64,000 bases of DNA, taken from IMG/VR virus record IMGVR_UViG_3300046543_000266, positions 1 through 64,000 of that record. One strand, given 5' to 3'. The notes below the pieces were generated by a model. It did not search any database, was not told the DNA's origin, and worked only from the letters and a program-made list of their open reading frames with translations. Positions 11,193 through 61,945 of this stretch are shown in pieces; positions within the stretch are counted from its first letter, which is position 1, and every line of letters starts with the position of its first letter. The translations under genes and the position numbers were made by a program.

Positions 11193-13870
11193 TTATGGCT
11201 CTCGCCAAAAAGAAAGTCGCCGCTCCGACAAAGAAGGCGGCTTCGTATTCGAGCAAGGACATCACAACCTTGCGCTTCCCGGACAACGTCCGCTCGAACC
11301 CTTCGATGTATCTTGGGTCGGTGGACGCCGCTGGTGTGTGGCTCACGGCCCGGGAATTGCTGGACAACGCGCTGGATGAGCATCTGGCGCACCGTAACGA
11401 CGCAGTCATGCTGCACGTCGATAAGGACGGCTCCTATTGGGTGCTGGATCGTGGTCACGGCGTGCCGCAGGGTGTGAAGAAGTTCAGCGTGCACGTCAAC
11501 GGCAAGGACATCGAGACGAAGATGCCCACGATGCAAGCCGTCTTCGGTGAACTGCATACGTCGGGCAAGTATCGCTCGGATGCATACGCAACCTCGGTTG
11601 GTACGCACGGCATCGGCGCCAAGGGCACCAACGCAACCTCGGAGTTCTTCGAGGTCTTCACGTTCTACGAAGGCCAGTGGTTCACCATCGGCTTCAAGAA
11701 GGGCAAGCTGGTCAAGCACGTCGCGAAGTGCAGCGCCCCGAAGGGTCCCGACGGCAAGACTGTTACCAAGGGCACGGTCATCCACTTCAAGCCGGATCCC
11801 ACGATCTTCACCGTCAAGTCCTTCCCACCCTCGATGGTGATGGAATGGGCCGACGTGATGTCGCATCTGAATCCCGGCTTCGCAATCGTCGTATCCAGCC
11901 CCAAGGGCAAGAAGCAGTTCCTGTCGAAAATCGGCCCGGCCGGTTACGTCCAGCAGCGCATCGAGAAGTTGAAGACCGAAGCTGAACGCCTGATGTTCGA
12001 GTACAAGTCGGATCTGGCGGACGTCGTGGTGGCCTTCTCGAACTATGACGGCTGCGACGTGCGCGGTTTCACGAACGGCCTGAACAATGCTCAGGGCGGC
12101 AAACATCTGGACGCTGTGACCGGCGCACTGTACGCGGGCCTCAAGCCCTACATCAAAACCAAGCGCGTGGAAGGGAAGCCGGTTCCGGTGTTCCGCGAGG
12201 CTGACTTCAAGGAAGGCTTGGTTGGTCTTGTCAACGCCAAGCTCCACAAGGCCGAGTTCAGTTCGCAGGACAAGGCACGGCTGACTGATGCTCGTATGGG
12301 TGCGGCGTTCGAGAAAGAGCTCACGCTGGCAACCATCAAGTTCTTCAAGGACAACAAGGCACTGGCACTGCGTCTGTGTGCGCGGGCCACAAAGCTCAAC
12401 GAACTGAAGACCAAGTTCACGTTGTCGAAGAAGGCTGCGTCCACGCTCAACGCTATGAAGCGCAACGGTCTGCCCGCCAAGTACGCTGGATTCGACAGCA
12501 AGACGAAGACCGAAGACCGCGAACTGTTCATCGTCGAAGGGGATTCGGCAGGTGGTACGGTCAAGAAGGGTCGCTTCCCGTATCAGGCAGTGCTGCCCCT
12601 CAAGGGCAAGATCATGAACGCGTTGAAGGATGGCAAGGGCAAGACGCTGGAGTCGGAGGAAATCCTGAACATCCTGGCGGCTATCGGCTTCGACGTCAAG
12701 GCAGTCGACCCGTATGCCAAGCTCACGGTCGGCAAGATTGTGTGTCTGGCTGACCCGGATCCGGACGGCCCCTTCATCGGCGACACCCGCATCAACTTCC
12801 GCTACAATACGCACGGCACGACGCAGTCGGCCAGCATCGAGTGCCTCGCCAAGATGGCAGCTGATGGTACGGAGTTCGTGGTTCCGGTGTGGAACGGCCA
12901 AACCGAAGTGTGGGCCAGCGCCAGCGCTCGCCTCGAACGCAACGTCGAGCAACTGGTTGCTCTCGAGATCGGCAAGACGAAGTACAAGGTCAGCGTCGAT
13001 CACAAGTGGCTGTGTGTTAAAACCGATGCGCTGCGCGGCCGCGACGTGGGCGAACATGCAGACAACCTCGTGTTCGTCAGGGCGGCTGATCTGAAGGTAG
13101 GCGACCGGGTGTTCATGCCCGCAGCTAACAACACGCGGGACAAGTCTAGCTGCGACTACGCGACGAAGCTCGGGTTCGCCCCAGTCTCGAAGATGCGCAT
13201 CCAGCAGTTGGACCAGCCGGTTCCGGTGTACTGTCTGAGCGTGCCGAAGTATCACCACTTCATGCTGCCTTCGGGTATCGTGTCGAGCAACTGCCACATC
13301 AACTCGTTGCTGCTCACGCTGTTCTACCGCTATCTGCCTGAGCTGTTCAGCCGGGGCATGGTGTTCGTTGCCAACAGCCCGGAGTTCTACAGCATCCACA
13401 AGAATCAGCTGGTGACCGGCGAGTCGCTGTCGGCAATGGGCAAGAACCTGAAGCGCATCAAGGCACCGGCCAACACGCCGATCCATCACATCAAGGGTTG
13501 GGGAGAAATCGATGCTCCGCTGATGCGCATCTTGGCAATGGACCCGGCCACGCGGAAGCTCATCAAGATTGGCGCAATCGAGCACGACGACAAGGTTGAC
13601 TTCGAGCGGCTCATGAACGACGACGTTGCCTATCGCCGTGACATGTTGGGCTTGCCGTCCAATGCCGTCGGCGGTGACGTGGAGGAGGAAGGCACTCCGA
13701 AGTCCAAGGCCGCACGTAAAGTACCTGTGAACAAAGCGGTCGTCGCAGCCAAGAAAATTGCGACAGCCAACCGGAAGATCGTTCACCGTCGCGATGAAAT
13801 CGAAGCCAAGCGCATCGAGAAGCGACGTGGCCTCCGTCCGGTGGGCAAGACGTTGCGCAAAGCCGCATAA
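11189..13870 (+). CDS. gyrB: type IIA topoisomerase ATPase/Toprim subunit (GyrB/ParE-like), intein-containing
   Basis: ELLDNALDE, DRGHG, GTHGIGAKGTNA (GHKL); IVEGDSAGG, PLKGKIMN, DPDPDG (Toprim). Confidence 0.95.
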   Translation: MIMALAKKKVAAPTKKAASYSSKDITTLRFPDNVRSNPSMYLGSVDAAGVWLTARELLDNALDEHLAHRNDAVMLHVDKDGSYWVLDRGHGVPQGVKKFSVHVNGKDIETKMPTMQAVFGELHTSGKYRSDAYATSVGTHGIGAKGTNATSEFFEVFTFYEGQWFTIGFKKGKLVKHVAKCSAPKGPDGKTVTKGTVIHFKPDPTIFTVKSFPPSMVMEWADVMSHLNPGFAIVVSSPKGKKQFLSKIGPAGYVQQRIEKLKTEAERLMFEYKSDLADVVVAFSNYDGCDVRGFTNGLNNAQGGKHLDAVTGALYAGLKPYIKTKRVEGKPVPVFREADFKEGLVGLVNAKLHKAEFSSQDKARLTDARMGAAFEKELTLATIKFFKDNKALALRLCARATKLNELKTKFTLSKKAASTLNAMKRNGLPAKYAGFDSKTKTEDRELFIVEGDSAGGTVKKGRFPYQAVLPLKGKIMNALKDGKGKTLESEEILNILAAIGFDVKAVDPYAKLTVGKIVCLADPDPDGPFIGDTRINFRYNTHGTTQSASIECLAKMAADGTEFVVPVWNGQTEVWASASARLERNVEQLVALEIGKTKYKVSVDHKWLCVKTDALRGRDVGEHADNLVFVRAADLKVGDRVFMPAANNTRDKSSCDYATKLGFAPVSKMRIQQLDQPVPVYCLSVPKYHHFMLPSGIVSSNCHINSLLLTLFYRYLPELFSRGMVFVANSPEFYSIHKNQLVTGESLSAMGKNLKRIKAPANTPIHHIKGWGEIDAPLMRILAMDPATRKLIKIGAIEHDDKVDFERLMNDDVAYRRDMLGLPSNAVGGDVEEEGTPKSKAARKVPVNKAVVAAKKIATANRKIVHRRDEIEAKRIEKRRGLRPVGKTLRKAA
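12770..13291 (+). mobile_element. 174 aa mini-intein, class-3-like, Pro at position 1
   Basis: Inserted between DPDPDG and CHINSLLL; PFIGDT..SVDHKWL..VYCLSV..HHF..GIVSSN|C; no LAGLIDADG motifs. Confidence 0.85.
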
Positions 13871-13879
13871 GGAATCGAC

Positions 13880-15463
13880 ATGGTAATCAAAAGACGAGTA
13901 GCGAAGCCCGAAGCCGACGATATGGACTTCGACAAACCCGCACCGCGCACACGGGCTCCGGCCCGTCGTGGCAAAGCGCCGGTCAAGCGGGTTCTGAAGG
14001 GTACTGAGGACAAGCACGTCGATAACGAAAGCATCCGTAGCTTCGGCAAGCGCAACATGACCACGTATGCTGTGGCGGTCAACCTCGATCGCAGCGTGCC
14101 TGACATGTACGACGGGTGGAAGCCTGTGCATCGCCGCATCATCTGGGCGGCTTCCACTCAGGCTCGCGACCTAACCAAGACGGCGCGGGTCGTGGGCGAT
14201 ACGCTTGGCAAGTATCACCCCCACGGTGACCGCAGCGTGGCCGACGCCATCGAGACGATGGTCAACATGCCTACTGCTCCGCTTTTGGGCAAGGGCAATT
14301 GGGGATCGATGATCGACAGCGCGGCAGCCATGCGATACACCAACATGAAGCTGTCGGCGTATGGCCTCACGTTCCTGAACCCGCACTACATCCACTCGGA
14401 AGTCACGTCGTTCGTACCCAACTACGACGACAAGGACGTGGAGCCGGTCACGCTTCCGGCGCAGTTGCCGAACGTGCTGATCAACGGCTCCGAGGGTATC
14501 GGCGTTGGCATTACCACTGGCTTGCCGTCGTTCACGCCTGAGTCGATGATCAGTGTGCTGGAGAGCATGCTCAAGGGTGAGAAGCTGAAGGCCGTCGACT
14601 TCGCGAAGCGCCTGAAGTTCGCTCACAAGTGGGGCGGGCAGATCGTCCAGTCGAAGGAGAACCGCTTATCAATGATGGGCATCTTCAACGGCAGCGTCGG
14701 CACTGTACAGTTCGAGTCGGCCATCGAAGTGGATCGTGACCGCAAGAGCATGACCATCGGCGACTGGCCTCCAGGCACTAACCTCGAGAAGTTCGTGGCG
14801 CGTGTCCGGGCCATGCCTGAATGTCAGCGCTGCTATAACAGCGAAGGCGTCACCAACTTCACGATCGAGTGCAAGCCCGCCTACAACTATGTGCAGTTCG
14901 ACAAGTTCGTTGAGAAGGTTCAGGCGGCGACTCGGCAGAAGCGCAACTACAAGATCAACGTAACGCAGCGTGTCGCCAACGATAACGACGGCGTCATTAG
15001 CTTCGAGACCAAGTTCTTGGCGCTGTCGGTGCCTGAGCTGATCTTGCAGTGGTTGCGTATGCGCCTCCAGTTGGAACTGAAAAGTCTGACGTTCCGGATC
15101 AAGAAGCAGGAAGCAGCCATCGCCTACTCCGAGCTCCTGATCTACGCGTGCGACAAACTGGATCTGATCTTCAAGGCGATTCGTAGCAGCGACCCGAAAG
15201 CCGCGATGGTAAAGCTGCTGAAGATCACCGAGGAGCAAGCCAAGCAAATCCTGGAGTTGCGCTTGTCACAACTCACGCGCATGGATCAAAGCGCGATGAA
15301 GGAAAAGCTGGCCGAGCAACGCAGTCATCACAAGCAACTGCTCGTGTGGCAGAAGAAGCCTCGCAGCAAGGTGCTTCTCGATCTCGAAGATGTCCGAGCC
15401 GCAATCGACAAGGACCGGAAGTTCGAAAACACCAAGGAAGAGCAGTCGCTTACGGTGGTGTAA
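13880..15463 (+). CDS. gyrA: type IIA topoisomerase breakage-reunion subunit (GyrA/ParC-like), no CTD pinwheel
   Basis: DGWKPVHRRI, KTARVVGDTLGKYHPHGD, AAMRYT (Tyr 14336-14338); only 527 aa. Confidence 0.95.
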   Translation: MVIKRRVAKPEADDMDFDKPAPRTRAPARRGKAPVKRVLKGTEDKHVDNESIRSFGKRNMTTYAVAVNLDRSVPDMYDGWKPVHRRIIWAASTQARDLTKTARVVGDTLGKYHPHGDRSVADAIETMVNMPTAPLLGKGNWGSMIDSAAAMRYTNMKLSAYGLTFLNPHYIHSEVTSFVPNYDDKDVEPVTLPAQLPNVLINGSEGIGVGITTGLPSFTPESMISVLESMLKGEKLKAVDFAKRLKFAHKWGGQIVQSKENRLSMMGIFNGSVGTVQFESAIEVDRDRKSMTIGDWPPGTNLEKFVARVRAMPECQRCYNSEGVTNFTIECKPAYNYVQFDKFVEKVQAATRQKRNYKINVTQRVANDNDGVISFETKFLALSVPELILQWLRMRLQLELKSLTFRIKKQEAAIAYSELLIYACDKLDLIFKAIRSSDPKAAMVKLLKITEEQAKQILELRLSQLTRMDQSAMKEKLAEQRSHHKQLLVWQKKPRSKVLLDLEDVRAAIDKDRKFENTKEEQSLTVV

Positions 15464-23809: not shown

Positions 23810-23934
23810 AGTAGTCGTTCATCTTGTTTCGCTTGTAGCACTTTGCAGTATAGGCCAATCTAAAATCACAAACGGGACACACCGACCCTTCCCAAACAAT
23901 CATCGGTGTGTCCCTTAAAACAAAGGTAATAAAA

Positions 23935-25692
23935 ATGAAAAAGACGACCATCGCAATCGCAATCCTGTCCTCGTTCGCAGCTCCGGCATTCGCAACGCAG
24001 TACGTGGCCTACGACACGGTTCCGGGCAGTCACGGCCAGTCGGAAGTGGACTACGGCAACGTCACGATGCAGGGTACGAACGGCACGAAGATCCACAACG
24101 TCGCGGCGGGTACGTCAGGCACGGATGCAGTCAATGTCAACCAGCTGAACAGCGCAATCGCTACGGTCAAGACCCAGAAGGGCGATACCGGCGCGACGGG
24201 TGCCACAGGTGCTCAAGGGGTCGCGGGTAAGGACGGCAAGAACGGCATCGATGGTAAGAACGGCATCGATGGTAAGAACGGCATCGATGGAGCAGCGGGT
24301 GCGACCGGCGCTCAAGGCGTCGCAGGTAAGGATGGTGCGAAGGGCGACACTGGCGCACAGGGTATCCAGGGTGTGAAAGGCGATAAGGGTGAGAAGGGCA
24401 ACACTGGCGCTTCTGTTGCTGGCGTGTCTATCAACGGCACGACTGTGACGACAACGCTCGACAACGGTTCGCAGGTGAACGGCACTATCACGGGTCTGGC
24501 TACGACGGAGCAGTTGAACCAGACGAACGTCAACGCCAGCGCTCTGGGTTCGAAGGTGGACCAAGCTACCACGACGGCGAATCAAGCCAAGTCCATCGCA
24601 CAAGGGGCAGACGCCAAGTCGAACACGGCAATCGGCATCGCCGCCGGAGCAGCTATCACCGCGACCGGTGCAGCCATCGTCAGCGGCATCGCCTACGAGA
24701 AGGCTGACAATGCTCAGCAAGTCGCTGGTCAGGCCAACGCCACGTCCAACCAAGCGAAGAACATCGCTCAAGGTGCGGCGTACCAAGCCAGTCACGCAGA
24801 CCAAGTCGCGGCTGAAGCCAACACGACGGCAGGTAAGGCAACCGTCACAGCACAGGCAGCAGATGCGAAGTCGGACATCGCACTGGCAACCGGCGTGAAG
24901 AACAGCGGTGACATCAACAAGCTGAACGCGGGCTTGGCGACTACCAACTCGCATGTCGCGCAGAACACGGCAGACATAGCGGCCAATCAGCAAGCCATCC
25001 GCTCGGAAGCTGGCCGTGCTCAAGACGCTGAGTGGAAGCTGGGATCAGCGATCACGTCGGAAACGTCGCGCGCAACGGCTGCCGAGCAGGGCATCCAGTC
25101 GCAAGTGACGGGCAACACGAAGAGCATCAACAATCTCAACGCACGCCAAGCCAACACCGAAGCGTGGATCGGAAATGCGAACGCGGGAGCCATCGGTCAA
25201 GGCTCGCAAGTGAAGGCGAACAACGCAGTTGCACTCGGTGCTGGCTCCGTGGCAGATCGTGACAATACCGTGTCCGTAGGCGCTGCTGGTCAGGAGCGTC
25301 AGGTCACCAACGTCGCAGCCGGTACGCAAGCAACCGACGCGGTGAACGTGTCGCAGCTGAACAGCTACATGCGTCAGACAGCAAAGGCGGTGGACAACTC
25401 GAATGCCTACACGGATCAGCGAGTCAACGCTCTGCAGTCGTCGTTCGATAGCTTCAAGAAGGATACCTACGGCGGCATCGCAACGGCGCTGGCAATTGCA
25501 GGACTGCCGCAGCCGACGGCTCCGGGTCGTTCGATGGTGTCGGTGGCGGGTTCCACGTATCACGGGGCAACCGGTCTGGCCGCTGGCTACTCGCAGGTAA
25601 CGCAAGACGAGCGTTGGGTGATGAAGGCGTCGGTTACCACGAGCAACCGTGGCGACTTCGGTGCTGTGCTCGGCGCTGGTCGTCAATTCTGA
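23935..25692 (+). CDS. trimeric autotransporter adhesin (YadA-like) with collagen-like G-X-Y segment
   Basis: Signal peptide MKKTTIAIAILSSFAAPAFA; VAAG..TDAVNVxQL necks; GXY repeats; AVALGAGSVA head; anchor GIATALA..GAGRQF. Confidence 0.92.
   Translation: MKKTTIAIAILSSFAAPAFATQYVAYDTVPGSHGQSEVDYGNVTMQGTNGTKIHNVAAGTSGTDAVNVNQLNSAIATVKTQKGDTGATGATGAQGVAGKDGKNGIDGKNGIDGKNGIDGAAGATGAQGVAGKDGAKGDTGAQGIQGVKGDKGEKGNTGASVAGVSINGTTVTTTLDNGSQVNGTITGLATTEQLNQTNVNASALGSKVDQATTTANQAKSIAQGADAKSNTAIGIAAGAAITATGAAIVSGIAYEKADNAQQVAGQANATSNQAKNIAQGAAYQASHADQVAAEANTTAGKATVTAQAADAKSDIALATGVKNSGDINKLNAGLATTNSHVAQNTADIAANQQAIRSEAGRAQDAEWKLGSAITSETSRATAAEQGIQSQVTGNTKSINNLNARQANTEAWIGNANAGAIGQGSQVKANNAVALGAGSVADRDNTVSVGAAGQERQVTNVAAGTQATDAVNVSQLNSYMRQTAKAVDNSNAYTDQRVNALQSSFDSFKKDTYGGIATALAIAGLPQPTAPGRSMVSVAGSTYHGATGLAAGYSQVTQDERWVMKASVTTSNRGDFGAVLGAGRQF
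24235..24288 (+). repeat. 3 x 18 bp tandem repeat (GKNGID)
   Basis: GG(C/T)AAGAACGGCATCGAT x3. Confidence 0.9.
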
Positions 25693-41331: not shown

Positions 41332-43263
41332 ATGAATACCAATCAAGATCTCGTATCGTTGAAGCGACAGTACAAACGGGCGGTGGTCGCGTACTACAAC
41401 GCAGACAAGCCCATCATGACAGACGCCGCCTTCGACAAGCTGGAGGACCAGATCCGCAAGGCTGATCCGTCGTGGAAGGAACTGGCTAACACTGGCGTCA
41501 AGGTTGCGGACAAGAAGACCGAGGCACCGTTGGTCGAGTTCATGCCTAGTCTCAACAAGATGTACCCGGAAGCGGTCAGCAAGTTCTACGCTCGCCCCGC
41601 GTCGGCCAAGGTCGGCGCATGGCTATGGATGGACAAGCTGGATGGGACCAGCCTCCAGCTAGTGTACAAGAACGGTCGCCCCTTCAAGCTTATCACGCGT
41701 GGCGACGGCACTCTTGGTGGTGACATCAGCTTCTTCCTGCCTACCTTGGTGAAGCTCAAGCGTATCCCGGCCCAGATCCCCACCAACGGACAGGTGGTGT
41801 TCCGCATCGAGGGTCTGATGTCAGTCAAGACGTTCGCGAAGAAGTGGTCGCGAGGCGTCCGGGGTAAGCTCGGGTTCGACAACATCCGCAACATGGTGAA
41901 CGGCCTCTTCAACAAGAAGGACATGCATCCGGCGCTGGTTGATGTGGACTTGGTGGTGTTGGGAGTGTACGACATGACCATGTACAAAGGTCTGCAGACG
42001 GCAGCCCAATGGGGATTCAACGTCGTGCATTATCAAGTAGTGAAGGGTCACAAGGATTCAGAGAAGGGTCACAAGGACGCAGAAGCGCACGGCAAAGCGT
42101 TGGAGGATCGTCGTGCCGCCAGCATTTACGAGATGGATGGTCTGGTGATTGCTCCGATGATGTTCGAGTTGTCCTATCCCAACGCGGACAAGCCCAAGGC
42201 ACTGATCGCCTTCAAGTTCAACGACGAGGAAAATGCGCAGCAGGTCGTGGTAGAGGACATCATCTGGCAAAAGACGCGGCTCAAGCGCTGGATACCGAAG
42301 ATCAACATCAAGCCCACCAAGATGGACGGCGTCATGGTTTCGAATGCGGCCGCCCACAACGCTGAGTGGATGAAGGAGAAGGGTATCGGGCCGGGAGCTA
42401 TCGTCAAGGTTCTGCGCAGTGGTGGCGTCATCCCGAAGATTGTGGGCGTCGTCAAGAAGGCTGCATTCAAGGAACCGCCTGGACCGTATGAAGTTCAGGG
42501 CGTCCACTTCGTCATGGCCGAGCACGACAAGGCAACCGAAGTACGTGGCATCCACTTCTTCATGACCACGCTTGGCGTCGAGCTCCTGGCCTCGAAGACC
42601 ATCAGCTTGCTGTATGACCACGGCTTCACGACGCCTGAATCCTATATCAAGCTGGCCCACGCATCGGACAAGATCATCAAGCATACGCTGGCTCCCGCAG
42701 AGTTGGGTCCAAAGCAAAGCGCCAAGATCATCGCTGAGCTGAAGCGCGTGCTGTGCAACACGGTGTCGCTGCGTCTGCTGATGGTGGCGTCGGGTGCCTT
42801 CGAGAAGGGTGGCATGGGTAAGCGCAAGCTGGAGCAGCTGGAGGACGCTGGTATCGCAATGGCCCGCTTGTGCAACATGAAGAGCCCTGAGCTTATCAGC
42901 ACGGTGGAAAACATCAAGGGCTTCAGCAGCAAGACTGCCACGATTCTGAATGACGGCGTGAAGGTGTTCCGTGAATGGTATCGTCCGCTGAAGGGCGTGC
43001 TCACCGTGGACGGCGCGTTACCTAAGAAGGCGAAGCCAGTCGCTGGTGGCAAGCTGTCTGGTATCAACGTGGCCTGGACTTCGTACCGGGACAAGGATCA
43101 GGAAGCGAAGGTTGTGGCCCTCGGCGGTGCCGTGGTTCCGTACGGTGCCAAGATGACGGTCCTGCTGTACAAGGAAGGAGCCAAGTTCGCAGCCAAGATC
43201 GAGAAGGCTGGCGACAAGGCCATGACGTGGGAAACGTTCACCAACAATTATGGAGTCAAGTAA
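41332..43263 (+). CDS. ligA: NAD-dependent DNA ligase (BRCT present, no obvious C4 Zn finger)
   Basis: YYN..PIMTDAAFDKL, MPSLNK, KLDG, TRGDG..G.DI, EMDGLV, AFKF, RSGGVIPKI. Confidence 0.93.
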   Translation: MNTNQDLVSLKRQYKRAVVAYYNADKPIMTDAAFDKLEDQIRKADPSWKELANTGVKVADKKTEAPLVEFMPSLNKMYPEAVSKFYARPASAKVGAWLWMDKLDGTSLQLVYKNGRPFKLITRGDGTLGGDISFFLPTLVKLKRIPAQIPTNGQVVFRIEGLMSVKTFAKKWSRGVRGKLGFDNIRNMVNGLFNKKDMHPALVDVDLVVLGVYDMTMYKGLQTAAQWGFNVVHYQVVKGHKDSEKGHKDAEAHGKALEDRRAASIYEMDGLVIAPMMFELSYPNADKPKALIAFKFNDEENAQQVVVEDIIWQKTRLKRWIPKINIKPTKMDGVMVSNAAAHNAEWMKEKGIGPGAIVKVLRSGGVIPKIVGVVKKAAFKEPPGPYEVQGVHFVMAEHDKATEVRGIHFFMTTLGVELLASKTISLLYDHGFTTPESYIKLAHASDKIIKHTLAPAELGPKQSAKIIAELKRVLCNTVSLRLLMVASGAFEKGGMGKRKLEQLEDAGIAMARLCNMKSPELISTVENIKGFSSKTATILNDGVKVFREWYRPLKGVLTVDGALPKKAKPVAGGKLSGINVAWTSYRDKDQEAKVVALGGAVVPYGAKMTVLLYKEGAKFAAKIEKAGDKAMTWETFTNNYGVK

Positions 43264-44939: not shown

Positions 44940-45256
44940 TGCTCAAAGCTGTCGAGTATAAAGTCCGATTGTTCAATCGGGAAATTCGCAAGCTACCATT
45001 CGTCCTGTCGTTAACCACTGACTATTGCATCAACGGCGACCTGCTGCCGATCGTGGAGATTACTGCGGTGATCGAAACCAAAGAGCCGGTGCAAACATCG
45101 CAGTACCTGAAAATCATCGAACTGTTCATCAACCACTTTGGTGATCAGGCGATACCCACAATCGAGACTGGCCCGACCACTGTCGTCATCAGCAAGGGCC
45201 GGTTCACCAACGAAACTGAAGTCATACATAAAAGCTTCTATGCCCAACTCTATTAA
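44939..45256 (+). CDS. hypothetical protein
   Basis: TAATG coupling. Confidence 0.6.
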   Translation: MLKAVEYKVRLFNREIRKLPFVLSLTTDYCINGDLLPIVEITAVIETKEPVQTSQYLKIIELFINHFGDQAIPTIETGPTTVVISKGRFTNETEVIHKSFYAQLY

Positions 45257-45647
45257 AGACCCAACCGCCACCGCCGTCGGGTATGATACCGACGATATCA
45301 TAGACATCGCCGAAGACTTCGGCACCGTAGTCGAGCCGGATCCGCGTGAAGGCATCCAAGGATTCGTGAGCTTCAGCTTCGAAGGGTTCATCAACTTCGC
45401 CAAGGCGCTGATCGTAGATGTGCGCAATGACGACTATTCTTCGCGCCTCAGCATGGACCACAAGCTTGACGTGGTGATGGCCCACGCTATCACCACGGCG
45501 CTCGGTCACGGCCTGTACGATCAATATGGTCCGTACATCCGCAACTGGCCCAAGGACGACAAGTACGTGCTGATGCATAGCGCACTCACCAAGCTTCTTG
45601 AAGAGCATCGTCAACGGCAAGCAGACAAGAGTCTACAAGAAGTGTAG
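45240..45647 (+). CDS. acidic hypothetical protein
   Basis: ATG 45240 in ORF 45138..45647. Confidence 0.6.
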   Translation: MPNSIKDPTATAVGYDTDDIIDIAEDFGTVVEPDPREGIQGFVSFSFEGFINFAKALIVDVRNDDYSSRLSMDHKLDVVMAHAITTALGHGLYDQYGPYIRNWPKDDKYVLMHSALTKLLEEHRQRQADKSLQEV

Positions 45648-45705: not shown

Positions 45706-46101
45706 ATGAAACGATTCTTGCTTCTGGCTGCGCTCGCGTCGACGGGTGTTGCTCATGCAGAGACTAACATGATCTTCACCGGGAACTTCGGCACGGGTCG
45801 AGCATCGTATGACCAATACGTCGACGGGTACAGTGTTCGTTCCGAAGGTAGCGAGGTCTACATCGCGGTAGCGGTTAAGCAGTACAAGATGGCGCAGACG
45901 TGGCCGGGTGCGGAGCGCAAGATGTACACTCACATGTTCATGCGCACGCGTGTGAACTGCGGTACGGGAACCGTAGGGTTTGAGCGTGTGATAGTTTCGG
46001 CCAACGGTCAAGAAGTCGACGATTTCACGACAGACGGCGAAATGATGTCTGCTGGCTTCAACACCAACAAGTCGGCGATCCGCGATCTTATCTGCAAGTA
46101 A
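45706..46101 (+). CDS. secreted/periplasmic protein
   Basis: Sec signal MKRFLLLAALASTGVAHA. Confidence 0.75.
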   Translation: MKRFLLLAALASTGVAHAETNMIFTGNFGTGRASYDQYVDGYSVRSEGSEVYIAVAVKQYKMAQTWPGAERKMYTHMFMRTRVNCGTGTVGFERVIVSANGQEVDDFTTDGEMMSAGFNTNKSAIRDLICK

Positions 46102-46180: not shown

Positions 46181-46519
46181 ATGAAAAAGATCATTGCTAT
46201 CGTCCTTGCATCCTTCGCACTCAACGCACACGCGGTCACCCCTGAACAGCAGATGGAGCGCGACGCCAATTGCGATATGATGGCGGGCTTCGGTGAGGTG
46301 GCAGCCCAGATGAAGGCCAAAGGTGGTAAGTACACCGACTACGCAGAAGTGGTCGACGCGACGCTTCGTCAAGAGCCGGCGGGCAAGCGGTACTCGATGG
46401 GGATTCATCGCATTGGCTCGTGGGTCTTCAGCCGGAACCAGCCTATGACCGACGTAGAAGTCAAGCGCAACACTCGCATCTCGTGCCAGCTCATGCCTGA
46501 GTGGTACGGTGTGAAGTAA
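46181..46519 (+). CDS. secreted/periplasmic protein
   Basis: Sec signal MKKIIAIVLASFALNAHA. Confidence 0.75.
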   Translation: MKKIIAIVLASFALNAHAVTPEQQMERDANCDMMAGFGEVAAQMKAKGGKYTDYAEVVDATLRQEPAGKRYSMGIHRIGSWVFSRNQPMTDVEVKRNTRISCQLMPEWYGVK

Positions 46520-46543: not shown

Positions 46544-46813
46544 ATGAATAACCGAATCGCAAAGGTTCCGATGATCCGAGAGGTCACGCAGTACTCCGCA
46601 CCTGACGGCAAGGTATTCCCCTCAGAGCAACAGGCTCAGCGTCACGCTGATGACCTGCTGTGCAACAAGCTCGAAGCGTTGATCAATCTTGCATTCCCAA
46701 CCGGTCACCGCCCTTCCACAATCAAAGCGGTAGAGCTTCTAGCCGAAGATCGCACTATCGCCGTTTCCATGTTGCGTGGGCTGCTCGACGTCCTTACCTA
46801 CGGCGACGAGTAA
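46544..46813 (+). CDS. hypothetical protein
   Basis: YSAPDGKVFPSEQQAQRH motif. Confidence 0.7.
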   Translation: MNNRIAKVPMIREVTQYSAPDGKVFPSEQQAQRHADDLLCNKLEALINLAFPTGHRPSTIKAVELLAEDRTIAVSMLRGLLDVLTYGDE

Positions 46814-46863
46814 CCAACTCGACTAACAAACCCGGTTCTATAACAATCTATGGAGAAGTAGCA

Positions 46864-47394
46864 ATGGACAACCAACACAAACACATCCGTGGCTATCGCG
46901 ATCTGACTGCTGCCGACATCGCGCTGATGAACACGTTGAAGCGGCAGGAGGCGAGCCTCAACCGCATTCTGACGGAAACCACGCAGACGTTCATGCGCAT
47001 CCTGGAAAGCGAGGCGACCAACGGTCTGCTGGCGCAACCCATCTACAGCGACAAGGTCCACACGCACAGCGAGCTGATGTCGAAGGCTAGGGACCAGCTG
47101 ATGGTGGGCTTCATGCTGGCGATCCGGTCCGTGGCACAGCCGCAACCTCTGCAGGAAGAGCAGACGCCGTTCGTGCCGTGGCGACGTGTCAACATTGACT
47201 CGATGTCCGACGAGAAGCTGAAGGCCAGCCCAGATCAGTTGGTACTCGCGATCAACGAGGACGGTCAGATCGAGCAGACCACGTATGCCACGATCCGATC
47301 AACGTTTGCCCGCACTGTCCCGTCCAGCCGTGGCATTCCCAGTTACTATCGCGCGTTCTGCCCGCTGTCGGATCTGCCGCTGCCCAAGGAGTGA
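46864..47394 (+). CDS. acb2: Acb2-like anti-CBASS cyclic-nucleotide sponge with ~83 aa C-terminal extension
   Basis: GGAG SD; MDNQHKHIRGYRDLTAADIALMNTLK...GFMLAIRSVAQP matches recalled Acb2 termini. Confidence 0.8.
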   Translation: MDNQHKHIRGYRDLTAADIALMNTLKRQEASLNRILTETTQTFMRILESEATNGLLAQPIYSDKVHTHSELMSKARDQLMVGFMLAIRSVAQPQPLQEEQTPFVPWRRVNIDSMSDEKLKASPDQLVLAINEDGQIEQTTYATIRSTFARTVPSSRGIPSYYRAFCPLSDLPLPKE

Positions 47395-47969
47395 TGATGC
47401 AACTTGATTTGCGTCGACGTGCAGTCATGGGCACGTTCTTGTTCAATCCTGCGTGGGTTGCGCAAGTGCCCACTCCAGGCTTTCAATCGAGAAGCATCTG
47501 GGCCAGCGCTCCCACGGTGTTCCAGGACATCTGGCCGGAAGCGAAGTCAAGTTCACCCGTCGCTGCACTGTGCGGTTCGCTTACCTTGCAAGGTCTACTG
47601 TACGTAGCTGCTCGGGTCGAAAGCGTGTGGCGTCCGTCCACGGATCAACGCGCAGTTATGCCTTCCATTCCTTTGGACGGTGTTCGTTACGAGTCCCCAC
47701 TGTTCGCACCTACTGAAGCCGGTATGCAATATCTGCTGACTAGCGACGATTTCGACCACCGGTCACTAGTCGAGCTCGGCATCCCGCGCGGCTGGCGCAA
47801 GATTGCCTACGACGCGCAGAACACCAAAGTCAGTCGGATGTTCGAGCACTTCGTCCATTACACGGTGGATGAACGCGATCATCTGATCGGCCGTGCCCTA
47901 GCGCGGCGACGACAACCGCGATCTGGAAACTCGCGTGGGAAGCAACCAGCAATTCTGAAGGGTGATTGA
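47391..47969 (+). CDS. hypothetical protein
   Basis: GTGA-coupled to acb2. Confidence 0.6.
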   Translation: MMMQLDLRRRAVMGTFLFNPAWVAQVPTPGFQSRSIWASAPTVFQDIWPEAKSSSPVAALCGSLTLQGLLYVAARVESVWRPSTDQRAVMPSIPLDGVRYESPLFAPTEAGMQYLLTSDDFDHRSLVELGIPRGWRKIAYDAQNTKVSRMFEHFVHYTVDERDHLIGRALARRRQPRSGNSRGKQPAILKGD

Positions 47970-48223
47970 CGGAGGCGGTCATGATTGGCATTAGCTCTAA
48001 ACCGAAGTACGCTCGTGGTGAGGAAGTCAGGCTAAGTCACACGGTAGACGCGGTGACTGGATTGGTAATCGATGTATTGCCGGGCGAGATCAACACAAAG
48101 CGATTGCTGTACGTGGTTGCCCTCAAGAATCCTCTGATCGACACTGCTGACGTGCACAATCGATACACCATTCAGTTCCTCGAAGCTGAAGAGCTTCGAC
48201 CATACGTAGCGGAGAGTTCATAA
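47966..48223 (+). CDS. small SH3-like hypothetical protein
   Basis: KYARGEEVRL..TGLVIDV..LYVV. Confidence 0.55.
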   Translation: MTEAVMIGISSKPKYARGEEVRLSHTVDAVTGLVIDVLPGEINTKRLLYVVALKNPLIDTADVHNRYTIQFLEAEELRPYVAESS

Positions 48224-48570
48224 TGGGTATCGGCCCTGGATACAAGTATCGAGGTTGTTCATCCTCGCCGTATAGCGTGCCGGACAGCAATCCGATACCG
48301 ACACGCTTCACGGTGCTGGATTGGCAGTACTTCCGCAACCGAAAGGGGAAACTGTATTTGCTTGTGAAGGTGAAGTACCCAGACGCCACGAACTTCGACG
48401 GCATCAAGGTTATGCTGTACCAAGGCTTTGCTCACGTGGATGATCTGCTGAATGCCACGAACAACGAGCTCGATCCGCACTTCTCTGAGCATGGCATCAG
48501 CCCAATCGCGCGGTTCCCACCCACTGACGCCGGATGGCGCCGAGCCCTCCGCTTCGCAGGTTCACTATGA
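48223..48570 (+). CDS. hypothetical protein
   Basis: TAATG coupling; LDPHF..SPIARFPPT motif. Confidence 0.7.
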   Translation: MGIGPGYKYRGCSSSPYSVPDSNPIPTRFTVLDWQYFRNRKGKLYLLVKVKYPDATNFDGIKVMLYQGFAHVDDLLNATNNELDPHFSEHGISPIARFPPTDAGWRRALRFAGSL

Positions 48571-49079
48571 ACAACAAGCACACTATGAACAACAAGCATG
48601 AAGTGACCGTTACCTCCGCCCCGGCCGCGTATCGGGTGTGGCCTTCCGGTGGAAACGCCTGGATTCTCACCCATGACGCGGCGTTTGTGGACTTCGCACG
48701 GCTCCACAAGTGGGAAGTCGTTGAACTGTTCGACAAAAGACAACTGCTACTGGTCGACGGCCTACCTGAGCCACGCATCGCCGAGTTAGCAGAGGCGACT
48801 CTGTGGCTCGCTTCGCGTTCGTTAGATGGTAGAATCGAAGATTACCTTGTGGACGCGATCACCACTGCGGTTCACGAGGCGGTCAGCGTATCTCAGGAAC
48901 ATGATCGCCTAGACGCCGACCGATGGCGAGCCTTCATGGCCGCCGGTATCCGTGGTGACTTGTGGGTCACGGCGTATCGACCACTAGGTCGAGCGAAGAA
49001 ACCTTCGGCTGTGCCTGTTATGGACCTGAATAGTTTCGCAGACGGACTTATCAACCCATCAACAAAGAGGGAATCGTGA
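48567..49079 (+). CDS. hypothetical protein
   Basis: ATGA-coupled; start lies in 18-bp tandem duplication 48563-48598. Confidence 0.65.
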   Translation: MNNKHTMNNKHEVTVTSAPAAYRVWPSGGNAWILTHDAAFVDFARLHKWEVVELFDKRQLLLVDGLPEPRIAELAEATLWLASRSLDGRIEDYLVDAITTAVHEAVSVSQEHDRLDADRWRAFMAAGIRGDLWVTAYRPLGRAKKPSAVPVMDLNSFADGLINPSTKRES

Positions 49080-53507: not shown

Positions 53508-53860
53508 CTCCCACCGGATGGTCGCACTCAGTGACCCATCGCCCTCCGGCAACCTTCCCGCCGCCGAACACGTTCAACCGGAAGGCCAAGGAGGTGTACC
53601 TGATTATGCGTCGCCCGAAAGTCAGTCCAAATGGTTTGGCGTCGGCCATTCAGATGACGCAGTTCTTCATCAATCGTGCGGGCAAGGCCATGCCCGAGAA
53701 GCAGAAGCATGAGCTTCGCAAGGCGATCGAGATGTTGCGCATCGAACTGCGTTTCCTCAAGCAATCAGAAGCGTGTGGGTTGAAGGGAAAGGCCAAGCCC
53801 GTTCACCCACCACCGGCGAAACGCATCGGTGGTCGCTTCGGTTATAACTGGAAAGGATGA
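53504..53860 (+). CDS. DUF3175-like protein
   Basis: LASAIQMTQFFINRAGKAM..ELRKAIEML. Confidence 0.7.
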   Translation: MTPTGWSHSVTHRPPATFPPPNTFNRKAKEVYLIMRRPKVSPNGLASAIQMTQFFINRAGKAMPEKQKHELRKAIEMLRIELRFLKQSEACGLKGKAKPVHPPPAKRIGGRFGYNWKG

Positions 53861-53863
53861 ATC

Positions 53864-54055
53864 ATGAGAACAGAGCGGTTGGTAGAACTGTTGCAGCACG
53901 ACGTGCACGAAGCTGTAGAGTTACTGCGATCCGTAGACGACTACGGCATCCGCCTCACTATGGGTGGCGAATGGTGTCATCGGGTGGATCGGTTGCTTGC
54001 CAAGTATCCACAGCATAACGGTGCTGCTCACGCCGCCGACGGAGATTCAGAATGA
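53864..54055 (+). CDS. hypothetical protein
   Basis: 63 aa ORF. Confidence 0.6.
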   Translation: MRTERLVELLQHDVHEAVELLRSVDDYGIRLTMGGEWCHRVDRLLAKYPQHNGAAHAADGDSE

Positions 54056-54366
54056 ACATGGACGATGACGTTGTGACTCAACTCGTGTTGCTCGTACTCG
54101 TCGTCATTCTTTTCGTCGGGTGGCTCTGGTCGGAGCGATGGGCACGTAGAAAGCTGCGGGCCTACGGGGACTCTCCTACTAACGATCCCTACATCGAGTC
54201 GGTGCGGGCCATGCGGGAAGCCAATCCCAGCATTCCCCCGTGCGCCGTGTCGATTCAAGATCGTGAGACTGGTGAGTTCTACTACTATCCGGCCGGTTCG
54301 GAACTCCGTATGAAACGTAACAAGAACGGTCGGCTGTACGCAGACCCGGCCGTTCAGCAGAAGTAG
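54052..54366 (+). CDS. membrane-anchored protein
   Basis: N-terminal TM, ATGA coupling. Confidence 0.65.
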   Translation: MNMDDDVVTQLVLLVLVVILFVGWLWSERWARRKLRAYGDSPTNDPYIESVRAMREANPSIPPCAVSIQDRETGEFYYYPAGSELRMKRNKNGRLYADPAVQQK

Positions 54367-60241: not shown

Positions 60242-61945
60242 GTGGACCAAACTAAAATCACCGCTTCACAGCTAGTCAATCTTCTCGAGATACTATACGT
60301 TCTCGTCATCGATTACGTTGAGAACGGACCCGAGCGCAAGCCGGACGCAGAAACCGCTGAAGAGCTCAAGCATCTGGGCAAACCTGCTGTCGCTCAGTGG
60401 GGCAAGGATCTGCCGGCTCTGCGAGACAGCATCAACGCGGCATTGGCTGGTCGCAGCAAAGCCGAGCAACTCGCGCTTCTCGGTGAAGAAGTGAAGGGTG
60501 CCTTCCAGAACTTCCGCGCCAACGAACGGTTCACCAGTCAGGAAATCGAACTGCTCAAGGCACTCGGCGCCTATCTGCGCACTGACTCCGAGATCGCGCT
60601 GCAGAAGATCAAGAAGTTCGCGGGCGTGATGAACAATCCGTACATCAGCAAGCGCATGGCTCCGGAAGTCGGCACACAGAAGAAGTCGTCGAATGCGTTG
60701 CGCCAACTCATCAAGAAGATGGTTGGTCGCGACGATACAGCTCTTACCTTGGACGAAGCGAAGATCGCCAAGGAGATGCATCCGGATCTGTATAAGCAAT
60801 ACATGGCGTATCGCAAACAGCACCGGGAAGTGTGGCAGAACGCGATGATCTCGTACATCCGTAACAGCGGACACAGCACGGTTCCGTACGAAGAGCTCCT
60901 GCAATATCTGCTGGCGAACGGCATCGACCACATGCTCCCGCTGGGATTCACTGGTCAGGTGGACGATCAAGGCAAGCTGTACACCAACGACGGTCATCTG
61001 ATCGACGGCGTGCCGCAAGCAACCAACTTCCCGAGCGTGGAAATGAACGCGCATTACGGTCAGCCGGGTGCCGAGCATTACGTGTTCCAAGCCATCCGCT
61101 CGAATGGCGGCCCCGGTCCGTACTTCTACACGTCTGACTTCAAGAAGGCCGCTAGTCGCGCCAAGTTTGAGAAGGTCGCCGATCTGGCACCGAAGCTCAA
61201 CTCAATGCAGAAGAAGTGGTTCGCCAACGTCAAGAAGTTCGATCCCGAGAACGTGCGCTGCGTCTGCGCTACCGTGCTGGAAATCCTGTACGAGTTCAGC
61301 GCCCGCGTCGGTTCCAAGGGTAACGCTGCGGCTGGACAATCCACGTTCGGTGTGTCCACGCTTCTGGTCCGTCACGTCAGCGTCGATCAAGGAGGCAATG
61401 TGATCCTGCGCTATCGCGGTAAGGACGCAGTGCCTACGATGCACAAGCTGATGAAGAACGATCCGCAGCAACGATTCGTGATCGCCAATCTGATGCAGCT
61501 GATGAACGGCAAGCAACCGAAGGATCGGCTGTTCACGGTGTCCAGTCCAACAGGACGACTCAAACCAGTTGGCGGTGCCGCGGTCAACGCGTACTTCCGT
61601 AGTCTGGGTGCGCCCGAAGGTGTGACCGTCCACAAGCTGCGTACCTTCCGTGGCACTGCGCTGTTCCGTGAGCTGATGGACAAGCTCTTCGAGAGTGGTA
61701 AGCTTCCGAAGGACGAACGCGCTGCAACCCTCATGTTCAACAAGATGGCGATGGCCGTCGGCAAAGCGCTCAATCACGTGCGCCGTGGTGCGAACGGGAC
61801 GTCAGTCACCGGGACAACTGCGCTTGCCAACTACATCGACCCCTCCATCCAAATCACCTTCTGGCGTCAGTTGGGCTTCCGACCGCCGAAGTCCCTCGAA
61901 CGCTTCGATGTCGGTGGTGGCGCTGGTTCCACTGACGAAGAATAA
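60242..61945 (+). CDS. DNA topoisomerase IB with long N-terminal extension
   Basis: Pentad: SARVGSKGN (R), FGVSTL..HV, YRGKD (K), HKLRTF (R), LNH (H), NYIDP (Tyr 61832-61834). Confidence 0.85.
   Translation: MDQTKITASQLVNLLEILYVLVIDYVENGPERKPDAETAEELKHLGKPAVAQWGKDLPALRDSINAALAGRSKAEQLALLGEEVKGAFQNFRANERFTSQEIELLKALGAYLRTDSEIALQKIKKFAGVMNNPYISKRMAPEVGTQKKSSNALRQLIKKMVGRDDTALTLDEAKIAKEMHPDLYKQYMAYRKQHREVWQNAMISYIRNSGHSTVPYEELLQYLLANGIDHMLPLGFTGQVDDQGKLYTNDGHLIDGVPQATNFPSVEMNAHYGQPGAEHYVFQAIRSNGGPGPYFYTSDFKKAASRAKFEKVADLAPKLNSMQKKWFANVKKFDPENVRCVCATVLEILYEFSARVGSKGNAAAGQSTFGVSTLLVRHVSVDQGGNVILRYRGKDAVPTMHKLMKNDPQQRFVIANLMQLMNGKQPKDRLFTVSSPTGRLKPVGGAAVNAYFRSLGAPEGVTVHKLRTFRGTALFRELMDKLFESGKLPKDERAATLMFNKMAMAVGKALNHVRRGANGTSVTGTTALANYIDPSIQITFWRQLGFRPPKSLERFDVGGGAGSTDEE

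What the first reader, a model, noticed from the sequence alone, without database searches (positions are those of the whole stretch)
46864..47394. Acb2 anti-CBASS sponge fused to an unknown ~83 aa domain
The first 93 aa (46864-47142) match the recalled Pseudomonas phage Acb2 at both ends (MDNQHK.I.GYRDL...I..MN..K; M..IR..AQP). Established: Acb2 is a ~90 aa hexamer that sequesters cyclic di- and trinucleotides. The extension (VPWRRVNIDSMSDEKL..LVLAINEDGQIEQ..YYRAFCPLSDLP) is extra and the gene is translationally coupled to 47391. This could be a bifunctional anti-defence protein.
Basis: partly seen in the sequence, partly recalled or inferred. Interest (0 to 1): 0.68.

Follow-up and report, generated by a model that had tools for sequence, protein, structure and literature searches.

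The report
Acb2 sponge with an orphan tail domain
A jumbo phage from plant-root soil carries a real gene in which a known anti-CBASS cyclic-nucleotide sponge (Acb2) is joined to a small, conserved, folded domain with no detectable relatives. It is a rare variant of a known counter-defence protein, and what the extra domain does is still unknown.

Summary
Window 46864-47394 (+) is one 176-aa gene with a GGAG ribosome site.

**Acb2 half (residues 1-93).**
- It matches Pfam Acb2_Tad1_hairpin above the curated cut-off, and the solved PaMx33 Acb2 at E 3e-6.
- A predicted model matches Acb2 and T4 Vs.4 best.
- The dinucleotide-binding Y11 and K26 are kept.
- The trinucleotide-binding R67 and T74 align to acidic residues.

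**Extra domain (residues ~104-176).**
- It follows a disordered Pro/Gln/Glu linker and is a confidently predicted small alpha/beta domain.
- It is under purifying selection.
- Three other metagenomic phages carry it, always fused to Acb2, and nothing else among 1.84 billion representative proteins matches it.
- It has no Pfam, PHROG or PDB match. A weak resemblance in shape to DUF551 failed the sequence and profile tests.

**Context.**
- The fusion is not an assembly error: contigs from independent runs cover it without a difference.
- The phage is a 217.6-kb relative of Ralstonia phage phiRSL1.
- The coupled downstream gene is a backbone gene of that lineage, not a private partner.

**Verdict.** This is a new variant of a known kind. 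It most likely works as a cyclic-dinucleotide sponge. The role of the added domain is open; a second counter-defence module is plausible by precedent but untested.

The parts
46852..46855 (+). Ribosome-binding site GGAG, 8 nt before the start codon
   Evidence: Read directly from the sequence.
46864..47394 (+). Whole coding sequence of the Acb2-fusion protein (176 aa plus stop), P0001
   Evidence: Full-length fused relatives are P0002 (77% identity), P0003 (70%) and P0004 (51%). Independent contigs carry it with 0 differences.
46864..47142 (+). Acb2 domain (aa 1-93): short N-terminal segment plus a hairpin of two long helices (16-52, 58-91). Y11 is the codon at 46894-46896 and K26 at 46939-46941.
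   Evidence: Pfam PF24729 at 29-31 bits, cut-off 27. PDB 8h2j at E 3e-6. Foldseek best matches are 8h2x/8h2j (TM by target 0.74, prob 1.0) and T4 Vs.4 7uq2. Y11 and K26 are invariant in alignment A1; their role is taken from PMC10312549.
47143..47172 (+). Linker (aa 94-103), rich in Pro, Gln and Glu, predicted disordered
   Evidence: pLDDT is below 50 for residues 93-101 in the full-length model. The QPLQEE stretch is invariant in the four fused proteins, and the closest stand-alone relative P0005 has a similar stretch in its tail.
47173..47391 (+). Orphan C-terminal domain (aa 104-176): a small alpha/beta fold (two short helices, three main strands, one helix) with a conserved proline-rich tail (F-C-P ... 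L-P-x-P)
   Evidence: The model of the domain alone has pLDDT 82.6 and pTM 0.69. dN/dS is 0.13-0.22 among the three closer relatives. There is no Pfam/PHROG/PADLOC/PDB match. An exhaustive profile search finds it only in fused relatives.
47386..47391 (+). AAGGAG ribosome site of the downstream gene, inside the last codons of the fusion gene
   Evidence: Read directly from the sequence. Packing is equally tight in L094 and L095, while L002 has a 105-nt gap.
47397..47969 (+). Downstream gene B (190 aa, P0007), function unknown. It follows the fusion gene in all four phages but is a backbone gene of phiRSL1-like phages.
   Evidence: Alignment A3. It is a homologue of phiRSL1 ORF105 (26% identity, E 2e-10) and BCSR5 has one too. 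It has no Pfam, PHROG or PDB match.

Best explanation
The gene encodes a cyclic-dinucleotide sponge of the Acb2 family that carries an extra, independently folded C-terminal domain.

Shown here:
- The N half is an Acb2 domain by sequence and predicted fold. It keeps the Tyr (Y11) and Lys (K26) that stack on and salt-bridge cyclic dinucleotides in PaMx33 Acb2. It also keeps the conserved C-terminal helix motif (G-F-M ... R ... A-Q-P) that lines the same pocket.
- The positions that hold cA3 phosphates in PaMx33 Acb2 (R67, T74) are acidic in all four fused proteins.
- The extra domain is conserved, under purifying selection, and found only in this fusion.

Inferred:
- Early in infection the protein assembles through its hairpins into a hexamer, like Acb2, and soaks up CBASS dinucleotide signals (3',3'-cGAMP and relatives) but probably not cA3. 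This keeps CBASS effectors off.
- The linker leaves the hairpin at the end of the last helix, next to the dinucleotide pocket, so six copies of the extra domain would sit on flexible tethers around the hexamer.
- Its most likely job is a second counter-defence activity riding on the same oligomer. It may bind another immune signal or a host defence protein, or tune what reaches the Acb2 pocket. The precedent is other phage sponge fusions (Tad2-Acb4, Tad2-Sequestin). This last step is the weakest.
For: Acb2 identity: (one search shows it is the only PF24729 match in the 217.6-kb genome).

Ligand residues: Y11 and K26 are invariant in A1. Y11A and K26A abolish dinucleotide binding, and R67A/T74A affect only cA3. 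T4 Acb2, with D in place of R67, does not bind cA3 (PMC10312549). R67 and T74 align to E70 and D77.

Pocket geometry: the cGAMP pocket is formed by the N- and C-terminal helices and loops of two head-to-head protomers (PMC10419184).

The extra domain is real:
- Confident fold.
- dN/dS 0.13-0.22 at dS near 1.
- Four independent assemblies and two independent runs.

Precedent: sponge domains are often fused, and fusion partners have proved to be new sponges (bioRxiv 10.1101/2025.07.12.664507).

Setting: a long same-strand block of small genes of unknown function in a phiRSL1-like jumbo phage.
Against: - No binding, oligomer or defence assay exists for this protein.
- The Pfam score is only 2-4 bits over the cut-off, and identity to PaMx33 Acb2 is about 26% outside the two ends.
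- The central alignment that places E70/D77 is of low confidence.
- The extra domain has no conserved basic patch obvious in the sequence, so it does not look like a typical positively charged nucleotide pocket.
- It is not a member of any known sponge family.
- Only four sequences exist, so conservation analysis is shallow.
- An appended domain next to the pocket could equally hinder hexamer formation or ligand binding.
Confidence: 0.6

Rival explanations
1. The extra domain is a DUF551-like 'portable' phage module. It would be a generic accessory domain (scaffold, solubility, localisation or partner docking) that phages attach to many proteins, with no immune-signal binding of its own. The protein would then be an ordinary Acb2 with an add-on.
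For: - Foldseek against viral models lists a DUF551 protein of Yersinia phage phiR1-RT (E 0.047, prob 0.82).
- ESM Atlas shape searches list DUF551-bearing clusters at TM 0.52 and MazG fusion proteins.
- The language-model feature search puts two DUF551 clusters first, at 0.85.
- DUF551 is described as a portable domain joined to varied proteins (PMC10834534).
- By eye both share an N-terminal Trp, a Pro before the first core strand, and an aromatic-x-x-P-L-x-x-P tail.
Against: - There is no PF04448 match for any of the four domains even at E 10, nor in the genome.
- hhalign of A2 against six DUF551 domains (P22, 933W, YfdS, phiR1-RT) gives probability 0.4%.
- The A2 profile finds nothing in three DUF551-bearing phages.
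- All structural scores are in the range the tools call leads only.
- DUF551 itself has no known function, so membership would not settle the mechanism.
Confidence: 0.2
2. The extra domain acts on the Acb2 pocket itself. It would be a tethered lid or selectivity filter that changes which dinucleotides are captured, for example to avoid soaking up decoy nucleotides of guard systems such as Panoptes that fire when a sponge removes them.
For: - The linker starts right after the A-Q-P motif that lines the dinucleotide pocket.
- Panoptes turns Acb2 binding against the phage, and its authors name tuning of Acb2 specificity as a way out (PMC12657218).
- The cA3 site is already remodelled in this clade.
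Against: - This is purely positional reasoning.
- The full-length model gives no confident inter-domain packing (pTM 0.41, disordered linker).
- No Panoptes or host information is available for this uncultured phage.
Confidence: 0.1
3. The fusion is an evolutionary accident: a stop codon was lost between acb2 and a small neighbouring gene. The two halves would work independently, and the second half would have a non-defence role, or none.
For: - Phage early regions are packed with short genes separated by a few bases, so stop loss easily fuses neighbours.
- The closest stand-alone relative, P0005, ends shortly after a similar QPQP ... EE tail.
Against: - No stand-alone copy of the domain exists among 1.84 billion representatives, in IMG/VR, or in the 5.8-billion word index, apart from an 87-aa fragment 100% identical to this phage on a 1-kb contig.
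- The fused state has been kept across relatives down to 51% identity, with dS near or above 1 and dN/dS as low as in the Acb2 half.
Confidence: 0.07
4. Not a real fusion: a sequencing or assembly frameshift, or a wrongly called ORF.
For: None was found. It was considered only because the genome is a metagenome assembly.
Against: - Independent run contigs cover the ORF and the domain junction with 0 differences.
- A second IMG/VR contig is identical.
- Three diverged relatives keep the frame.
- Substitutions in the extension follow a codon pattern.
Confidence: 0.01

Closest known systems
Acb2 of Pseudomonas phage PaMx33 (PDB 8H2J, 8H2X, 8IXZ-8IY2) and T4 Vs.4 (PDB 7UQ2)
   Same: The N-terminal M-D-N-Q-H-K ... 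G-Y-R-D-L motif is the same, as are Y11, K26, the two-helix hairpin and the C-terminal R-x-x-A-Q-P motif. Like T4 Acb2, it lacks the Arg at the cA3 site.
   Different: It is twice as long, with a linker and a folded ~73-aa domain after the A-Q-P end. Both cA3-site positions are acidic. It sits in a 217.6-kb phiRSL1-like jumbo phage from rhizosphere metagenomes.
Tad1 (Thoeris anti-defence 1), the other family sharing the Pfam Acb2_Tad1_hairpin domain
   Same: It is a hairpin domain joined to a second, non-helical domain in one hexameric sponge (general knowledge; Pfam family name).
   Different: To my knowledge Tad1's extra beta-sheet part precedes the hairpin; here the extra domain follows it. 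No Tad1 chain appears in the PDB sequence search at E 10 or among the fold matches of the extra domain.
Sponge-sponge fusions (Acb4-Tad2 of Pasteurella phage Pm86; Tad2-Sequestin; Sequestin-Acb4)
   Same: A known signal sponge is joined to a second small domain on one polypeptide. In those cases the partner proved to be a sponge too (bioRxiv 10.1101/2025.07.12.664507).
   Different: That paper's fusion search started from Tad2 and Acb4, and none of the fusions it names involves Acb2. The partner here belongs to no known sponge family and has no stand-alone relatives.
DUF551 (PF04448), a portable phage domain (P22, 933W Ea22-like proteins, E. coli YfdS)
   Same: It is of similar size and is appended at the C terminus of varied phage proteins. 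There is a weak resemblance in shape and language-model features, and a similar Pro-rich tail.
   Different: There is no HMM or profile-profile similarity. The stretch between the Trp and the first core strand is about 9 residues longer.
Stand-alone Acb2 homologue of Burkholderia phage BCSR5 (QRE00057.1, 106 aa)
   Same: It is the Acb2 domain in the nearest cultured phage lineage that has one.
   Different: It has no extra domain and lies elsewhere in the genome, inside a 7-deazaguanine gene cluster. phiRSL1 and Motura have no Acb2 at all.

Membership tests
Acb2 (anti-CBASS 2 sponge) | Sequence match to the family model (Pfam PF24729) above the curated cut-off, and to solved Acb2 | tested here: met
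   29.4 and 31.3 bits against a cut-off of 27. 30.2 bits in the genome scan. PDB 8h2j at E 3e-6 over residues 1-94. phrog_717 at E 1e-15.
Acb2 (anti-CBASS 2 sponge) | Fold: short N-terminal segment plus two long antiparallel helices | tested here: met
   The AlphaFold2 model has helices 16-52 and 58-91. The top Foldseek PDB matches are 8h2x, 8h2j and 7uq2, with prob 1.0 and TM by target 0.60-0.74.
Acb2 (anti-CBASS 2 sponge) | Cyclic-dinucleotide pocket residues Tyr11 and Lys26 (PaMx33 numbering) | tested here: met
   Both are invariant in the four fused proteins and in P0005. Their role comes from PMC10312549.
Acb2 (anti-CBASS 2 sponge) | Cyclic-trinucleotide pocket residues Arg67 and Thr74 (present in only some members) | tested here: not met
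   They align to E70 and D77, which are acidic in all four fusions. This feature is not required for membership, since T4 Acb2 and CHI14 Acb2 each lack one of the two residues and do not bind cA3. The alignment is of low confidence in this stretch.
Acb2 (anti-CBASS 2 sponge) | Single-domain protein of about 70-100 aa | tested here: not met
   It is 176 aa, against 72-103 aa for nearly all of the best 80 IMG/VR relatives. All 82 phage-record matches stop near residue 100.
Acb2 (anti-CBASS 2 sponge) | Homo-hexamer that binds cyclic nucleotides and inhibits CBASS | not testable with these tools
   This needs protein work (SEC-MALS, ITC, plaque assays).
Tad1 | Tad1-type beta-sheet domain and sequence similarity to solved Tad1 | tested here: not met
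   No Tad1 chain appears in phmmer/hmmsearch of the PDB at E 10. The fold searches of the extra domain give no Tad1 match.
DUF551 (PF04448) | Match to the family HMM or profile | tested here: not met
   There is no hit at E 10 for any of the four domains and none in the genome. hhalign probability is 0.4%. The reverse search is empty.
DUF551 (PF04448) | Shared fold | tested here: inconclusive
   Foldseek BFVD gives E 0.047. Atlas TM is 0.52 to DUF551-bearing clusters. The feature score is 0.85. All are below the tools' own trust levels, and no solved DUF551 structure was found to compare.
Known second sponge families (Tad2 PF11195, Acb4 PF13876, Sequestin PF21825) | C-terminal half matches one of these family models | tested here: not met
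   The Pfam scan of the four C-terminal domains at E 10 is empty. There is no PF11195 or PF21825 match anywhere in the genome. The PF21825 search rang in no control genome either, so that one is weak.

The most novel reading that the evidence does not exclude
The orphan C-terminal domain would be a new kind of counter-defence module, such as a binder of a different immune signal (a Thoeris, Pycsar or type III CRISPR messenger) or of a host defence protein. Displayed six-fold on the Acb2 hexamer, it would let one small protein disarm two signalling systems. If its faint likeness to DUF551 is real, it would also give the first functional handle on that widespread phage domain of unknown function.
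Probability: 0.2. Interest if true: 0.8.

Novelty: new variant of a known kind. Interest (0 to 1): 0.55.

Why it matters
Acb2 is one of the most widespread phage counter-defence proteins and has been described as a minimal single-domain sponge. A conserved version with an added folded domain shows that the scaffold can carry cargo.

Fusion partners of other sponges have already led to a new sponge family (Sequestin), so this partner is a concrete, cheap-to-test candidate for an unknown counter-defence activity. It would also test whether the Acb2 hexamer tolerates bulky C-terminal additions next to its ligand pocket. That matters for how phages might retune sponges against guard systems such as Panoptes.

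The limits are that the domain is confined to four uncultured rhizosphere phages, and that its function is not predictable from sequence or fold.

Tried and rejected
1. **Partner test.** Complex prediction of the C-terminal domain (A2) with the downstream gene product (A3) scored 0.01 against a mark of 0.32. The tool's verdict is 'no answer', so it is evidence neither way (the first try did not complete). Separately, the partner idea lost weight because gene B also occurs in phiRSL1 and BCSR5 without the fusion.
2. **DUF551 membership.** HMM, profile-profile and reverse searches were all negative. It is kept only as a weak fold lead.
3. **Solved-structure matches for the extra domain.** Foldseek PDB gave nothing better than E 0.55. 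The Foldseek-independent scan of 48,161 chains gave a best Z of 3.9, below the tool's noise level. The PDB profile search was empty.
4. **Beta-clamp motif.** The stretch P-D-Q-L-V-L-A-I resembles a clamp-binding motif, and Pol IV little-finger chains were the top (insignificant) Foldseek rows. However, it is a predicted buried strand, and the Gln is Glu in P0004. I take it as chance.
5. **Tat signal in gene B.** Its N terminus has an R-R-R-A-V-L-G stretch, but the cleavage-site pattern is not conserved among the four homologues. Rejected.
6. **Near-identical DNA in cultured phages.** None was found.
7. **Promoter and terminator scan.** Nothing above shuffled expectation near the gene.
8. **PADLOC scan.** The scan of the gene and four neighbours was empty.
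9. **Literature.** A first search with loose terms was uninformative.

Full report
**What is there.** The window is the first 64 kb of a 217,605-bp virus record with direct terminal repeats, rated complete. It is about 56% G+C, with no tRNA genes in the window. At 46864-47394 on the + strand lies a 176-codon gene. GGAG stands 8 nt before the ATG, and the stop is TGA at 47392-47394. A longer frame from a GTG at 46660 overlaps the upstream gene. All relatives begin at the same M-x-x-Q-H-K, so it is not the start.

**The N half is Acb2.**
- Residues 1-93 match Pfam PF24729 (Acb2/Tad1 hairpin) at 29.4 bits for the whole protein and 31.3 bits for the half alone, against a curated cut-off of 27.
- They match phrog_717 at E 1e-15.
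- They match the solved PaMx33 Acb2 (8h2j, 8ixz) at E 3e-6 over the full length of that protein.
- An AlphaFold2 model gives two long helices (16-52, 58-91). Its best PDB matches are Acb2 (8h2x/8h2j, TM by target up to 0.74, probability 1.0) and T4 Vs.4 (7uq2).
- It is the only such domain in the genome.
- Tyr11 and Lys26 are invariant here. Their mutation abolishes cyclic-dinucleotide binding in PaMx33 Acb2 (PMC10312549).
- Arg67 and Thr74 hold cA3 in PaMx33 Acb2. They align to Glu70 and Asp77, which are acidic in all four fused proteins, whereas the stand-alone relative P0005 keeps Arg and Thr.
- T4 Acb2, with Asp at the Arg67 position, does not bind cA3. I therefore predict a dinucleotide-only sponge. 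The caveat is that the alignment is least certain in this middle stretch.

**The C half is real, folded and without relatives.**
- After the A-Q-P end of the Acb2 domain comes a ~10-residue Pro/Gln/Glu linker that the model leaves disordered (pLDDT under 50 for residues 93-101).
- It is followed by a compact alpha/beta domain. Modelled alone from only four sequences, this domain reaches pLDDT 82.6 and pTM 0.69.
- Three other proteins carry the same architecture: P0002 (77% identity), P0003 (70%) and P0004 (51%, on a 223-kb contig). All come from separate public assemblies.
- Among the three closer pairs, dS is about 1 or more and dN/dS of the extra domain is 0.13-0.22, the same as for the Acb2 half (0.13-0.25). 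Against the distant P0004 it is higher (0.4-0.9), with saturation as a caveat.
- The word-index search with the domain alone found only an 87-aa fragment identical to this phage on a 1-kb contig.
- A profile search that read all 1.84 billion representatives found only P0002 and P0004.
- IMG/VR holds it only on a second contig of this same phage, and the genome has no second copy.
- Pfam at E 10, PHROGs, PADLOC and PDB sequences give nothing.

**How unusual the architecture is.** All 82 phage records with a match cover only about residues 1-100. Of the best 80 of more than 475 IMG/VR relatives, nearly all are 72-103 aa. One is 111 aa and two are 137 aa (an internal insertion plus a low-complexity tail). 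Two are cut short (17 and 54 aa). Only this phage's own copy reaches 176 aa. This is a sample, not a census, so other Acb2 fusions with different partners are not excluded.

**Not an artefact.** The phage DNA occurs in many rhizosphere metagenome runs. In runs not flagged as the possible source, one 7,336-bp contig spans 46500-47531 and another spans 47008-47734, both without a single difference or indel.

**What the extra domain might be.**
- Fold searches against solved structures are blank: Foldseek gives nothing better than E 0.55, and the best Z in the wide scan is 3.9.
- Three weak leads point the same way. A DUF551 protein appears among viral models (E 0.047). DUF551-bearing and MazG-fusion clusters appear in the ESM Atlas at TM about 0.5. 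DUF551 clusters come first in the feature search, at 0.85.
- I fetched six genuine DUF551 domains from P22, 933W, E. coli YfdS and phiR1-RT and compared profiles. hhalign gives 0.4% probability, and neither HMM finds the other's sequences.
- So this is at most a distant similarity of shape. DUF551 has no known function, although it is described as a portable domain attached to varied phage proteins (PMC10834534).

**Neighbourhood.**
- The gene sits in a long same-strand run of small genes with no family matches.
- The next gene (47397-47969, 190 aa) has its AAGGAG inside the last codons of the fusion gene. It follows the fusion gene in all four phages, with a gap of 1-2 nt in L094 and L095 and 105 nt in L002.
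- That gene is a distant homologue of phiRSL1 ORF105 (26% identity, E 2e-10), and BCSR5 has one too. phiRSL1 has no Acb2, and BCSR5 has a stand-alone 106-aa one elsewhere.
- The downstream gene therefore belongs to the lineage's backbone, and the coupling is not evidence of a shared function.
- A complex prediction of the two gave no verdict.

**The phage.** Its topoisomerase IB is 61% identical to that of Ralstonia phage phiRSL1, 52% to Burkholderia phage BCSR5 and 48% to Achromobacter phage Motura, all jumbo phages of about 220-230 kb. With the rhizosphere origin, a soil betaproteobacterial host is the reasonable guess. That is inference.

**Mechanism.**
- Shown: an Acb2 domain with an intact dinucleotide pocket signature, plus a conserved and selected extra domain.
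- Established elsewhere: Acb2 forms hexamers whose dinucleotide pockets are built from the N- and C-terminal helices and loops of two head-to-head protomers (PMC10419184). Sequestration of the signal blocks CBASS effectors.
- Inferred: this protein does the same for dinucleotide signals, and six extra domains hang on flexible tethers that emerge beside those pockets.
- By analogy with Tad2-Acb4 and Sequestin fusions, where the unknown fusion partner turned out to be a sponge, the most likely role is a second counter-defence activity.
- Alternatives are a generic DUF551-like accessory module, a lid that retunes the Acb2 pocket (relevant to Panoptes-type guards), or a neutral stop-loss fusion.
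- I put about 0.9 on the Acb2 sponge part and about 0.35 on an independent second counter-defence function. The overall confidence in the combined statement is 0.6.

**Verdict.** This is a new variant of a known kind. It is of moderate interest as a specific, testable lead, not as an established bifunctional protein.

Noticed in passing
window 47397-47969; L104 3131-3589 (phiRSL1 53630-54088): The downstream gene B is a distant homologue of phiRSL1 ORF105. There it lies between a cytidyltransferase/Nudix gene (ORF104) and a nicotinamide phosphoribosyltransferase gene (ORF106), a pair that looks like an NAD-salvage module. This phage's own genome has no NAPRTase-family match.
   Followed up: partly
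L105 1578-1898 (Burkholderia phage BCSR5 9077-9397, minus strand): BCSR5 carries a stand-alone 106-aa Acb2 homologue inside a 7-deazaguanine gene cluster (GTP cyclohydrolase I, 7-carboxy-7-deazaguanine synthase). phiRSL1 and Motura have none.
   Followed up: partly
window 45706-46101 and 46181-46519 (+): Just upstream are two small ORFs (131 and 112 aa) whose N termini look like Sec signal peptides ending A-H-A. They and the 89-aa gene at 46544-46813 are missing at this position in the distant relative L002, where the fusion gene directly follows a homologue of the gene at 45138-45647.
   Followed up: no
window 11189-15463, 23908-25692, 41332-43263, 60242-61945 (+): The window holds topoisomerase II large and small subunit genes, a collagen-like tail-fibre gene, an NAD-dependent DNA ligase and a topoisomerase IB. 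The last places the phage with phiRSL1, BCSR5 and Motura.
   Followed up: partly
window 48223-48570 (+): A 115-aa gene three genes downstream matches phrog_13501 (unknown function) at E 2e-22. It is the only firm family match among ten neighbours.
   Followed up: no
window 48534-49079 (+): The N terminus of this ORF holds a short direct repeat in the protein (M-N-N-K-H twice), so its true start is unclear.
   Followed up: no
L002 6514-6618: In the distant relative, a 105-nt spacer (with a doubtful 65-codon ORF rich in Cys and Pro) separates the fusion gene from gene B, so the tight coupling seen in the window is not universal.
   Followed up: no
L057 794 onward and L069 23 onward (IMG/VR contigs): Two IMG/VR Acb2 relatives of 137 aa have an Ala/Lys-rich insertion in the hairpin and a ~27-aa low-complexity tail. 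This is another, smaller departure from the usual Acb2 size.
   Followed up: no
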